Source: Magallana gigas
Lineage: Eukaryota
DNA length: 64,000 nt
Assembly (NCBI RefSeq): GCF_963853765.1
Contig: NC_088857.1
Location: 19,592,001-19,656,000, forward strand
Direction of reading: 5' to 3'
Both the position numbers and the translations under genes were made by a program. Within the stretch, counting starts at the first letter, position 1. Every line of letters starts with the position of its first letter. Below, piece after piece: positions 4,172-7,100 of this stretch. Below the pieces are notes generated by a model. The model was not told the DNA's origin. It worked only from the letters and a program-made list of their open reading frames with translations, and did no database searches.

Positions 4172-7100
4172 TTACAAGAGTACACATGAACTGGATTTGT
4201 TCTGGCTCTTAATGGCCTCAGATGTCTGTTTCTTAGCTTTGGGGTCTTCCTTTTTCTCCTTCTTTTCCTTCTTCTGTGGTGGTTTCAACTTAGCCCCTCC
4301 CTCTGATTTAGCTGACTTGTTAGAGTTAGCAGATGATTTCCTTTCTTTCTTGAGTTTATCAGCAGATGATGCTTTCCTCTTGTGTAATTTTTTTTTACCA
4401 GTGCCCTTTCCTGACTTTTTCTCATCATCGGAAGAGGACGAAGAAGAAGAAGAAGAGGAAGATTTAGAGGAATCAGAGGAGGTGTCATCTGTGGTCAGAA
4501 AGAAATAAAAGCAAGCATGATTTTCTGTGTAGTTTTGTACAAATTGGCATGTAATATTATGAATCATTCATGTTGAATTTCACATATTGACAGTAAGGGA
4601 TATTTTGTGGAATATTCATCAATATTTGTTGTTTATACCAATCTTGATCACTGGCCTGTAATGAACTGTATACAGGGTTATTTTTGCCCCGGTTTAATTT
4701 TCACCCTTCTTCACTTGCAAACAGTTTTGCCCCATTTTAAATTCGCCCAAACACAGTTGTCTTTAAAGATAAATAATTTGAGATATTAGAATTCACCTAG
4801 CCTTAAATTTGCCCACTGACGATGAAAGCAAAAAGGGCAAAAATAAAATGGGACAAATATTTTCCCTGTATATGAATTTACATATCCTTGAAATTTTGAT
4901 TTTTTCTCTAAATCCACAAAAATCGATGCCCATGACTTAAAATGAAACCATAGTATTTATATCATTTTTTATCAAAAGCAGCTAAGGAAAGAACAATTTT
5001 GTCGGGAAGCAATCATTTGACAATCAAGATAAGAAATCCAAGTCATTGTTAAGGGAAGATGAAAAAAATAAAATTGAAGTAATTGTAAAGAAAATGTATA
5101 TAATGTATATAAATATATAATCAATTTTTCTAAATATACCAGGATTCGATGGTCAAATCACATAGGAAATCCTGACCAGCAGAATATAAATGTTTGAATA
5201 ATTGATGCACAATTGAATAACTATATAGGTATTAATAACATTTTTGTACAAATTGATCCAATGTCTCTCCCAATGTTTAGCAATACAAGTATACATACAT
5301 GTATGTGGACACATAAGTGAACAATAATATTCAGCAAGCTTTTCTTACCAACAAGCCTCTCATAATATTTGCCAAGTGAATATACATACTAAAGCCATAT
5401 TAGAAAAAAAAATTCCTCCTAAAATACGTACCAACTATTTACCTTTTTCCTGTGGGATAAGGGCGATGCATTTCTCGGCGGCATCGTTTGTGGGAGCATA
5501 GTAGATCTTGTGAATTAGGTCGGTGGTCAGCTTCTTCTTCTTGTGTTTGTCTGCTTCCTCCAACATACGCTTCATGGCAGCCTGTGATTACAAATATTCA
5601 AATTCTCCTTTAAATTAAATATCAATCTATTTTCATATGTCAAACAGTTTAGCTCATTTACAGAACTAAAATTCTATCTTGTAATAATTCATAAAACATT
5701 ATTTCTGTTTTATTTGTATTTTTCATAGTAATTAATTATATATGTACATGTAATTTGTTGCATGAAAAAGCCATTGACATTCAAAACTAGATGCTGTCAT
5801 TAGACAGTAATACCCGCACCATGTGTTTGCCCCTAATTAACACTGTTTTGTACCAGTTTAATTAAAAATAAAGGCTACATGCAAGCTCCGGTAATACAAT
5901 TAAAATTTATAATTTTCATAACTGAAGGATGAGATCCCTTCCCATATGATAATACACATCGTGACATGAGCAGCACTTTATGTGCAATTTGGGGTAGAAC
6001 TGTTTGCAGTGAATTAGTTAGGGGTCCAGAACCCCCCCCCCCCCCCCTCCCCATGAAAATTCATTTATATCAATTGTAAAATTACCAAAAATACACATTG
6101 GACCCCAGTGCTCTTACAGACATGTAAACGCTTTAACCCATTGCGCTTCAATGCTACATGTAGGTAACATTATTTGGGGGGTAAATATTTAATCAATATT
6201 TAATATACTTTATTGTTTATCTCAATAGAAAGTATACATGTACATCACAATATGCAGGTGTCCTGCACCACCTTAAAGCTGTTATTTACCTAATAAAATA
6301 GTGCAGGTGGATTTGAAGAATAGGTCATAAAAATACATGCATGTTACAAATGAATGATCTTTGTCTGAAGTTACGTACACAACACAGGTCTGCATGTCTC
6401 ATTAGCGGGTACTAGTTTTACCCAGCTCTTCGATTAGATGGGATACATGGGTGTTGCTAAAACGCGGAACGGAAAACGGAATGGAAAGCGGAACGGAAGG
6501 GAAAACGGAAATCTTATCTAATGTTATTTACCTCATAGATTTGTTAATCATGCTAAAACGATATACTTTATGTACCATTTTAATTTTTTTTGAAAGATTA
6601 GCAATATTAGATTATTTATTCAAGATTATTTATTTCCTCAAAATTAACAGTACATGCATTGACCACTATATTCTGTCCCAAAATATCCTCGATTCACTGT
6701 TTGCTGTATATTTATTAATACCTCAGGGTTCAAGCGATTCTCTTTTAGAAGCATTAAACATACTCATTATTCTTTCTTTAAAACGTCCTCTCTAGCTTAT
6801 CAGCTGGTATAAATACACGGCTAAAAATAAAGAAGTCTACGGAGTTTTGCATTTCAACAGACCCGGATGATAGTGTTGAAAAATTGTGCAAGGTCATCTG
6901 AGTGACTTCCAAATGGAGAAAAGATGTCAACATTTTCCATTATAAATCGTCCAAATGTGCTGCATGAATATTTTGGGATCGACAGACTATAGTCCCAATA
7001 TATAATCGGAACATCAAACCAGGCAACGTCTAGAGCTCTCTATTTGGATCATATGTATATAGCTGGAGGGATAAACAACTGCCAAGAAATGCAAACGTAA

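What the first reader, a model, noticed from the sequence alone, without database searches (positions are those of the whole stretch)
4172..4488. Kinesin-3 with a polybasic tail and CaaX box (…[12 protein letters not shown]): a candidate prenylated motor
Seen: the last exon encodes an acidic poly-Ser block ([23 protein letters not shown]), about 75 Lys-rich residues and a terminal CVLL. Established: CaaL is the geranylgeranyltransferase-I signature, and polybasic plus prenyl is the KRAS4B/Rac membrane anchor. Kinesin-3 motors normally bind lipids through PH, PX or CAP-Gly tails, and CENP-E is the familiar prenylated kinesin. Inference: this KIF28/KLP-6-like motor may bind its cargo membrane directly through a lipid anchor, possibly switched by phosphorylation of the Ser tract. 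The exon lies beyond a 6-kb and a 1-kb intron, so tail-less isoforms are possible.
Basis: partly seen in the sequence, partly recalled or inferred. Interest (0 to 1): 0.72.

Follow-up and report, generated by a model that had tools for sequence, protein, structure and literature searches.

The report
Oyster kinesin with switchable lipid-anchor tail
The last exon of the Pacific oyster KIF28 kinesin gene encodes a floppy tail ending in a prenylation signal (CVLL) that is conserved in this motor family from comb jellies to sea squirts, and an 11-base shift of the splice site decides whether the motor carries it.

Summary
Window 4488-4172 (minus strand) is the last coding exon of Magallana gigas KIF28P, a kinesin-3 of the KLP-6 type. 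It encodes 105 residues: an acidic poly-Ser block, a Lys-rich stretch and a terminal CVLL.

The exon is spliced to the kinesin mRNA in two ways. Donor 5443 gives RefSeq isoform X1 (1065 aa, CVLL). A second donor 11 nt downstream (5432) brings a TAG into frame and gives isoform X2 (962 aa, ending EKGK), so the tail becomes 3'UTR. Contigs of three of the four RNA runs I laid showed only the short form. Two other public transcript contigs show the long form.

Of 120 family proteins of at least 800 aa, 83 end in C-a-a-X. They come from ten animal phyla and one cryptophyte alga, and 80 of the 83 have a Ser three residues before the Cys. A frame-shifting insert of 10-13 nt, with the intact CaaX tail ORF left in the 3'UTR, recurs in four other lophotrochozoan transcripts and one crustacean. 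A jellyfish-like transcript does the same with a 55-nt insert.

I found no paper on a KIF28/KLP-6 CaaX. Prenylation is strongly predicted but untested. The KRAS-like polybasic part is restricted to some lineages.

The parts
4172..4488 (-). Last coding exon segment of KIF28P isoform X1 (residues 961-1065 plus the stop). In isoform X2 the same bases are 3'UTR.
   Evidence: CDS identical to XP_065940443.1; transcripts L002, L003
4421..4488 (-). Acidic poly-Ser block [23 protein letters not shown] (residues 961-983, net charge -5, 16 Ser/Thr)
4187..4420 (-). Lys-rich disordered stretch (residues 984-1061, net charge about +21)
   Evidence: AlphaFold2 pLDDT below 50 for residues 963-1065
4175..4186 (-). 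CaaX box CVLL (Cys codon 4186-4184). The Ser three residues upstream is the nearly invariant Ser of the family.
4172..4174 (-). TAA stop of isoform X1
3093..4171 (-). 3'UTR, at least 1.08 kb, as covered by transcript contig L003
4489..5431 (-). Last intron as spliced in isoform X2 (943 nt, GT..AG)
   Evidence: joint 4488/5432 in runs X8, X10 and X13
5432..5442 (-). 11-nt segment GTAAATAGTTG between the two tandem donors. It is intron in X1 and exon in X2, and it carries the in-frame TAG at 5437-5435.
5443..5581 (-). Penultimate exon (AAMKRMLEE...[10 protein letters not shown]), a conserved helical segment. The upstream donor is AAG|GTAAAT at 5443/5442.
5582..11627 (-). 6046-nt intron, rich in repeats
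11628..11861 (-). Exon 19 (end of the MATH-like domain and start of the C-terminal helix). Donor at 11628.
12164..19097 (-). Exons 2-18: motor domain, neck, FHA, MBS and MATH-like domains. Exons: 19097-18891, 18778-18646, 18201-18122, 17983-17872, 17681-17570, 17389-17282, 16953-16823, 16518-16222, 15960-15836, 15609-15443, 14398-14267, 14031-13877, 13589-13303, 13177-13094, 12937-12875, 12626-12483, 12289-12164.
19594..19744 (-). Exon 1 (5'UTR from at least 19744; ATG at 19638), followed by a U12-type AT-AC intron at 19593-19098

Best explanation
The exon is the alternatively used C-terminal coding exon of the Pacific oyster KIF28P gene, a kinesin-3 of the KLP-6 type. Two 5' splice sites lie 11 nt apart at the end of the penultimate exon. 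The upstream site (5443) joins ...IPQEK in frame to a 105-residue disordered tail that ends in CVLL. The downstream site (5432) includes a TAG, so the protein ends ...EKGK and the tail is untranslated. These steps are shown. The rest is inferred. CVLL would be a genuine CaaX signal, geranylgeranylated by GGTase-I on Cys1062 and then trimmed and methylated. The lipid, helped in molluscs by the basic stretch, would tether this probably monomeric motor directly to a membrane through a long flexible linker. The splice switch would then set the ratio of lipid-anchored to soluble motor. The family-wide Ser three residues before the Cys, and the poly-Ser block, are candidate phosphorylation sites that could modulate attachment; this is speculative.
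For: Gene model and isoforms: the window CDS equals XP_065940443.1 (X1) and XP_065940444.1 (X2) with 0 differences. Splicing: joint 4488/5432 in RNA runs X8, X10 and X13, and a loose end at 5582 that matches 11629-11658. Junction 5443/4488 appears in the intron-less contigs L002 (SRR15559850) and L003 (SRR22292629), 92-100% identical to the window exon by exon (most exons 97% or more), and in a congener, L001. Family: best solved structure is KLP-6 (7WRG, E 2e-80); kinesin and FHA Pfam domains are present and no PH or PX domain was found. CaaX conservation: 83 of 120 family proteins of at least 800 aa end in C-x-x-X. The a2 residue is L, I or V in 80 of 83, X is L in 49, M in 13 and Q in 12, and Ser stands three residues before the Cys in 80 of 83. 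On the tree, CaaX occurs in every clade except one small paralogue clade. Coding constraint on the tail: dN/dS is 0.37 against a congener (Fisher p 0.004) and all indels are in frame. Conserved switch: four other lophotrochozoan short-isoform transcripts and one barnacle-like transcript carry a 10-13 nt insert beginning GT, followed by an intact CaaX tail ORF in a shifted frame. A jellyfish-like transcript has a 55-nt insert. RefSeq lists long and short isoform pairs in Biomphalaria, C. virginica and Rhopilema. Apostichopus has two alternative last exons, each with its own CaaX. The tail is predicted disordered, with pLDDT below 50 from residue 963. The genome has three loci with prenyltransferase beta-subunit repeats. 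From my own knowledge, X = Leu directs GGTase-I, and CVLL is the CaaX of Cdc42.
Against: No lipid has been shown on any KIF28 or KLP-6 protein, and I found no paper that mentions one. Three of the four oyster RNA runs I laid assembled only the tail-less form, and the fourth showed no joint. Among the listed cluster members the short form sits on more contigs than the long form, so the anchored isoform may be minor or tissue-restricted. The basic residues are not next to the Cys (net +3 in the last 20 residues), and basic tails are absent in echinoderms, hemichordates and many arachnids, so electrostatics are not a conserved part of the mechanism. The vertebrate representative (a ray) lacks the CaaX. 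Published KLP-6 work used C-terminal GFP fusions, which would block a CaaX; I could not see the C-terminus of C. elegans KLP-6.
Confidence: 0.7

Rival explanations
1. The CaaX is prenylated, but the lipid is a sorting or protein-binding handle rather than a cargo-membrane anchor. It could bind a prenyl-binding chaperone of the PDE6-delta type that delivers the motor into cilia, or a partner protein, as the farnesyl group does for CENP-E and Spindly at kinetochores.
For: KLP-6 is a ciliary kinesin in C. elegans, and prenylated ciliary proteins such as RAB-28 use a PDE6D route (papers found; the rest is my own knowledge). The conserved element is only S-x-x-CaaX, without a conserved second membrane signal. 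X varies between L and M/Q/S among clades, so the kind of isoprenoid is not conserved.
Against: No data place oyster KIF28 in cilia. Mollusc and jellyfish tails add a strong basic stretch, which fits membrane binding. A single geranylgeranyl group binds membranes appreciably on its own (my own knowledge).
Confidence: 0.17
2. The terminal Cys motif is conserved for a reason other than prenylation, for example palmitoylation, a degron or a binding epitope.
For: Caenogastropod X2 isoforms replace the CaaX with Cys clusters (CCCKKKL and CLCCRKGKLSFSS), which look like acylation sites. A few family members end in weak X residues such as T, H or P.
Against: The Cys is fixed at exactly position -4, and a2 is aliphatic in 80 of 83 proteins. 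That is the prenyltransferase recognition rule and is not expected of other motifs. The Cys-cluster variants also point to lipidation.
Confidence: 0.08
3. The tail ORF is an accidental open frame in a low-complexity 3'UTR, and the long isoform is splicing noise.
For: The short form dominates the contigs laid. The tail evolves faster than the body (dN/dS 0.37 against 0.057). The tail-only protein search was blank.
Against: The ORF, its architecture and its CaaX persist across phyla. Indels are in frame. Only 18 of 20000 shuffles are open. Full-length long-isoform transcripts exist in several species.
Confidence: 0.03

Closest known systems
C. elegans KLP-6 / KIF28 (KLP6) subfamily of kinesin-3
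   Same: It is homologous from the motor through the FHA, MBS and MATH domains (7WRG, E 2e-80, aligned to KLP-6 residue 849). The region after the MATH domain is disordered in both: KLP-6 residues 842-928 are unresolved and oyster residues 963-1065 have pLDDT below 50. There is no PH or PX domain.
   Different: No lipid modification or CaaX is described for KLP-6 or mammalian KLP6. The one vertebrate KIF28 examined (a ray) has no CaaX and groups with CaaX-less paralogues of Haliotis and Owenia. The oyster gene is therefore probably not the strict orthologue of vertebrate KIF28, despite its RefSeq name.
CENP-E (kinesin-7), the known farnesylated kinesin
   Different: It belongs to a different kinesin family, is farnesylated rather than predicted geranylgeranylated, and acts at kinetochores rather than on membranes. 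No splice switch for its CaaX is known to me.
Cdc42 / Rac / K-Ras4B type anchors (polybasic stretch plus CaaX)
   Same: CVLL ends in Leu, as GGTase-I substrates do. There are basic residues upstream and a Ser close to the Cys, as in Cdc42's KKSRRCVLL (my own knowledge).
   Different: The basic stretch lies 15-80 residues from the Cys, not next to it, and occurs only in some lineages. The carrier is a 120-kDa motor, not a small GTPase.
KIF1A/UNC-104 PH domain and KIF16B PX domain
   Same: These are kinesin-3 motors that bind cargo lipids directly.
   Different: They use a folded lipid-binding domain, not a covalent lipid. Pfam finds no such domain here.

Membership tests
Kinesin-3, KIF28/KLP-6 subfamily | N-terminal kinesin motor domain | tested here: met
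   PF00225, E 2.2e-100, residues 11-360 of P0215
Kinesin-3, KIF28/KLP-6 subfamily | FHA domain after the neck and first coiled coil | tested here: met
   PF00498, E 5.9e-8, 33.5 bits against a cut-off of 20.7
Kinesin-3, KIF28/KLP-6 subfamily | MBS (KIF1B-type) domain followed by the MATH domain of KLP-6 | tested here: met
   Continuous alignment to KLP-6 chain 7wrg_A residues 407-849, E 2e-80. The Pfam KIF1B hit alone is below its cut-off (20.0 against 22.2 bits).
Kinesin-3, KIF28/KLP-6 subfamily | No PH, PX or CAP-Gly tail domain | tested here: met
   No such Pfam hit at E <= 0.01. A C2 label precomputed for some relatives was not reproduced for the oyster protein.
Kinesin-3, KIF28/KLP-6 subfamily | Orthology to vertebrate KIF28 | tested here: not met
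   In the FastTree tree the ray KIF28 groups with CaaX-less paralogues, apart from the oyster clade. There is a long-branch caveat and no outgroup.
CaaX prenylation substrates (GGTase-I / FTase) | Cys exactly four residues from the C-terminus | tested here: met
   CVLL then TAA; also in 83 of 120 family proteins
CaaX prenylation substrates (GGTase-I / FTase) | Aliphatic a2 residue, and an X residue that selects the enzyme (Leu for GGTase-I) | tested here: met
   a2 is Leu and X is Leu here. Across the family a2 is L, I or V in 80 of 83, and X is L 49, M 13, Q 12. The enzyme rule is from my own knowledge.
CaaX prenylation substrates (GGTase-I / FTase) | Flexible, accessible linker before the Cys | tested here: met
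   AlphaFold2 pLDDT 29-41 over residues 963-1065; hydrophilic KSSS precedes the Cys
CaaX prenylation substrates (GGTase-I / FTase) | Motif conserved among orthologues | tested here: met
   Ten animal phyla plus a cryptophyte
CaaX prenylation substrates (GGTase-I / FTase) | Prenyltransferases encoded in the same genome | tested here: met
   Three loci with PF00432 beta-subunit repeats. I did not resolve which is the GGTase-I beta subunit.
CaaX prenylation substrates (GGTase-I / FTase) | Isoprenoid actually attached to the Cys | not testable with these tools
   Needs metabolic labelling, in-vitro prenylation or mass spectrometry

The most novel reading that the evidence does not exclude
Most members of an ancient kinesin-3 family (KIF28/KLP-6-like, ctenophores to tunicates) are covalently lipid-anchored motors. 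Their attachment to membranes is turned on or off by a deeply conserved frame-shifting splice switch at the last intron. The prenyl anchor would concentrate an otherwise non-processive monomer on membranes, or sort it into cilia. It could therefore be the missing activation and cargo-binding factor for this family.
Probability: 0.3. Interest if true: 0.85.

Novelty: new variant of a known kind. Interest (0 to 1): 0.7.

Why it matters
How KIF28/KLP-6 motors bind cargo and become active is an open question. [quoted passage not shown] A conserved prenylation signal on a disordered tail, switchable by splicing, gives a concrete and cheap hypothesis: the motor is tethered and concentrated on membranes by a lipid. 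It would be the first kinesin-3 with a covalent lipid anchor. It also warns that C-terminal tags on these motors would destroy the signal. The 10-13 nt tandem-donor switch, shared by molluscs, another lophotrochozoan and a crustacean, is a clear example of conserved frame-shifting alternative splicing that controls a post-translational modification.

Tried and rejected
- A homologue search with the tail alone found nothing. This says little, because of the length window and the low-complexity sequence.
- Pfam hits on the tail (CCSAP, SRP-alpha_N, YL1 and others, E 0.016-0.8) are low-complexity noise.
- I tried twice to see the C-terminus of C. elegans KLP-6 through the PDB sequence search, once with an urchin tail and once with a 40-sequence profile of CaaX ends. 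Neither aligned to 7wrg_A, so whether KLP-6 itself has a CaaX stays open. In one search the weak tail alignment stopped at chain residue 922, six residues before the native end.
- A C2-domain reading of the beta-sandwich before the tail was not reproduced at E <= 0.01. Homology to the KLP-6 MATH domain is the better call.
- The plus-strand ORF 4197-4508 is the antisense of the low-complexity exon, not a gene.
- Literature searches for KIF28 or KLP-6 with CaaX, prenylation or farnesylation, and for 'prenylated kinesin', found nothing relevant. The library lacks most subscription papers.
- Read laying is capped at one call of 6000 bases, so the 11628/5581 junction rests on a loose end and not on a spanning joint. 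Contigs cannot give the ratio of the two isoforms.

Full report
**What is in the sequence**

On the minus strand, window 4488-4172 follows a good acceptor (polypyrimidine tract, then cag|). Joined to the last G of the upstream exon, it reads as 105 codons:
- [23 protein letters not shown], an acidic poly-Ser block (net charge -5);
- 82 further residues, mostly Lys-rich (net charge about +21);
- the ending [12 protein letters not shown], then TAA.

Ser and Lys make up 28 residues each. Only 18 of 20000 shuffles of the exon stay open in this frame.

**The gene**

The exons upstream (19744 down to 11628) carry a kinesin motor, kinesin-associated, FHA and KIF1B-type signatures.

I aligned public intron-less transcript contigs to the window and obtained 21 exons. 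All introns are GT-AG except the first (19593-19098), which is a U12-type AT-AC intron.

The CDS assembled from the window is identical, with 0 differences, to RefSeq XP_065940443.1, 'kinesin-like protein KIF28P isoform X1 [Magallana gigas]', 1065 aa. So the window is Pacific oyster and the gene is already annotated.

The closest solved structure is full-length C. elegans KLP-6 (7WRG, E 2e-80), aligned through the MATH domain to KLP-6 residue 849. Pfam finds no PH, PX or CAP-Gly domain.

An AlphaFold2 model of residues 420-1065 is confident up to about residue 962. It has pLDDT 29-41 over residues 963-1065, which is the tail. This parallels the unresolved residues 842-928 of the KLP-6 crystal structure.

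**Splicing**

I laid the contigs of four RNA runs that hold the exon on window 4000-9999.

- In three runs (X8, X10, X13) one contig joins 4488 to 5432, with GT..AG ends on the gene strand. It then runs to 5582 and on into letters that match 11629-11658 exactly. In the fourth run (X9) no joint was reported.
- The 11628->5581 junction is therefore confirmed, and the tail exon belongs to the kinesin mRNA.
The 11 extra bases (GTAAATAGTTG) put TAG 5437-5435 in frame. The protein then ends ...IPQEKGK and the whole 'tail' becomes 3'UTR.
- That product is identical to RefSeq isoform X2 (XP_065940444.1, 962 aa).
Two intron-less contigs from other public runs (L002, SRR15559850; L003, SRR22292629) use it and encode the 1065- or 1063-residue CVLL form. 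They are 92-100% identical to the window exon by exon, most exons at 97% or more. A congener contig, L001, does the same.
- Both donors look usable: AAG|GTAAAT and TTG|GTACGT.
- Among the listed members of the 90%-identity cluster, the short form sits on more contigs than the long form. This agrees. Contigs cannot give a ratio.

**Is the Cys conserved?**

Yes, strikingly so. I collected relatives in three ways: a profile-free search with a mid-protein exon, a word-based search with the Biomphalaria orthologue and a search with a 12-sequence alignment.

Of 120 family proteins of at least 800 aa, each representing a 90%-identity cluster:
- 83 end in C-x-x-X;
- 12 are '...EKG..' short isoforms;
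- 25 are other isoforms, partial models or a CaaX-less paralogue.

Among the 83 CaaX ends:
- the a2 position is L, I or V in 80;
- X is L in 49, M in 13, Q in 12 and S in 4;
- a Ser stands three residues before the Cys in 80.

CaaX ends occur in molluscs, annelids, nemerteans, brachiopods, chelicerates, a millipede, crustaceans, echinoderms, hemichordates, amphioxus, tunicates, cnidarians and a ctenophore. A Guillardia (cryptophyte) kinesin-3 also ends in CaaX. Many of these are transcript-derived, so they are not gene-prediction artefacts.

On a FastTree tree built without the last 60 residues, every clade contains CaaX members except one small clade: a Haliotis paralogue, an Owenia paralogue and a ray, the only vertebrate in the set. 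That grouping carries a long-branch caveat, and the tree has no outgroup.

The sea cucumber has two alternative last exons, each ending in its own CaaX, CIVQ and CVVM.

Between M. gigas and a congener the tail has dN/dS 0.37, against 0.057 for the body. The synonymous excess has Fisher p = 0.004, and all indels are whole codons. This is what one expects of a disordered but coding region.

**The switch is conserved too**

Short-isoform transcripts from four other lophotrochozoans (L004/L005, L006, L007, L008) and from a barnacle-like crustacean (L010) each show the same three features:
- after the conserved ...EK or ...LE codons there is an insert of 10, 13, 13, 10 and 11 nt respectively, beginning with GT;
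- a stop codon follows within a few codons;
- an intact tail ORF ending in CVLL, CVLL, CHLL, CVVL or CTVM lies downstream in a shifted frame.

A jellyfish-like transcript (L009) reaches the same result with a 55-nt insert. Its tail has the same design: poly-Ser/acidic, then Lys-rich, then S-x-x-CaaX. RefSeq lists long and short isoform pairs for Biomphalaria, C. virginica and Rhopilema.

**Interpretation**

Shown:
- the exon, its two modes of use and the gene's family;
- deep conservation of the Cys at -4 with an aliphatic a2 and an upstream Ser;
- deep conservation of a frame-shifting switch that includes or excludes the tail.

Inferred from the established CaaX rules (my own knowledge):
- CVLL is a GGTase-I substrate. 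The same four residues end Cdc42.
- After prenylation, proteolysis and methylation, the motor would be held on a membrane through a linker of about 100 residues.

Three prenyltransferase beta-type loci exist in the genome. The basic stretch could add electrostatic binding in molluscs and jellyfish. It is absent from many other phyla, so the KRAS4B analogy is not the conserved core.

A role of the lipid in chaperone-mediated ciliary sorting rather than in cargo binding is a serious alternative, because KLP-6 is a ciliary motor. Phospho-regulation through the conserved Ser or the poly-Ser block is speculation.

**What is known**

Neither of the two KLP-6 papers I read mentions CaaX or prenylation, and the functional paper used C-terminal GFP fusions. 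Eight literature searches found nothing on a prenylated KIF28 or KLP-6. The library lacks most subscription journals, so an earlier mention cannot be excluded. I could not see the last six residues of C. elegans KLP-6.

**Verdict**

The gene and its two isoforms are already annotated. The new points are the recognition of a family-wide, splice-switched prenylation signal on a kinesin-3, and the mechanism of the switch.

Interest is fairly high because the hypothesis is concrete and cheap to test, and it bears on the unknown cargo-binding and activation mechanism of this motor family.

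Noticed in passing
window 19098-19593 (minus strand): The first intron of the kinesin gene is U12-type. It starts ATATCCTT, has the branch-site motif CCTTAAC at 19112-19106 and ends AC. It splits ...RPF|NRRE of the motor domain. Transcript contigs L002 and L003 confirm the junction 19594|19097.
   Followed up: partly
window 5600-9999 (the 6-kb intron): Most of this intron is covered by hundreds of short RNA-run contigs at very high summed depth (up to about 10000 in metatranscriptomes), with many variants. 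These are probably transcribed repeats or transposable elements. A PSVR-rich repeated open frame (...[14 protein letters not shown]...) also appears at 11160-11438, with a similar one at 1907-2295.
   Followed up: no
P0183 (Babylonia X2) and P0184 (Littorina X2): These caenogastropod isoforms end in Cys clusters with basic residues (...SQLCCCKKKL and ...ACLCCRKGKLSFSS) instead of a CaaX. This may be a palmitoylation-type alternative lipid anchor on the same motor.
   Followed up: no
P0154-P0159 (Apostichopus japonicus isoforms): There are two alternative terminal exons, each ending in its own CaaX box (CVVM and CIVQ).
   Followed up: no
G000:C3:22017010-22017378 and G000:C4:25978284-25978985: The oyster genome has two further loci with KIF28-like MBS/MATH exons (36-56% identity). 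They are probably the paralogues seen in other phyla. I did not examine their C-termini.
   Followed up: no
tree; P0107, P0063, P0115: The only vertebrate KIF28 in the set (a stingray) groups with CaaX-less paralogues of abalone and Owenia. Vertebrates may have kept only the anchor-less paralogue. There is a long-branch caveat.
   Followed up: partly
P0101 and cluster (Guillardia theta, MMETSP transcripts): A cryptophyte kinesin-3 with a KIF1-type domain also ends in a CaaX (CSIQ).
   Followed up: no
window 21828-22121 and 23806-24054 (minus strand): Open frames downstream of... rather, beyond the kinesin promoter read like a gamma-glutamylcyclotransferase/AIG2-like protein (MQRVFVYGTLKKGQPNHHL...). 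This was seen by eye only.
   Followed up: no
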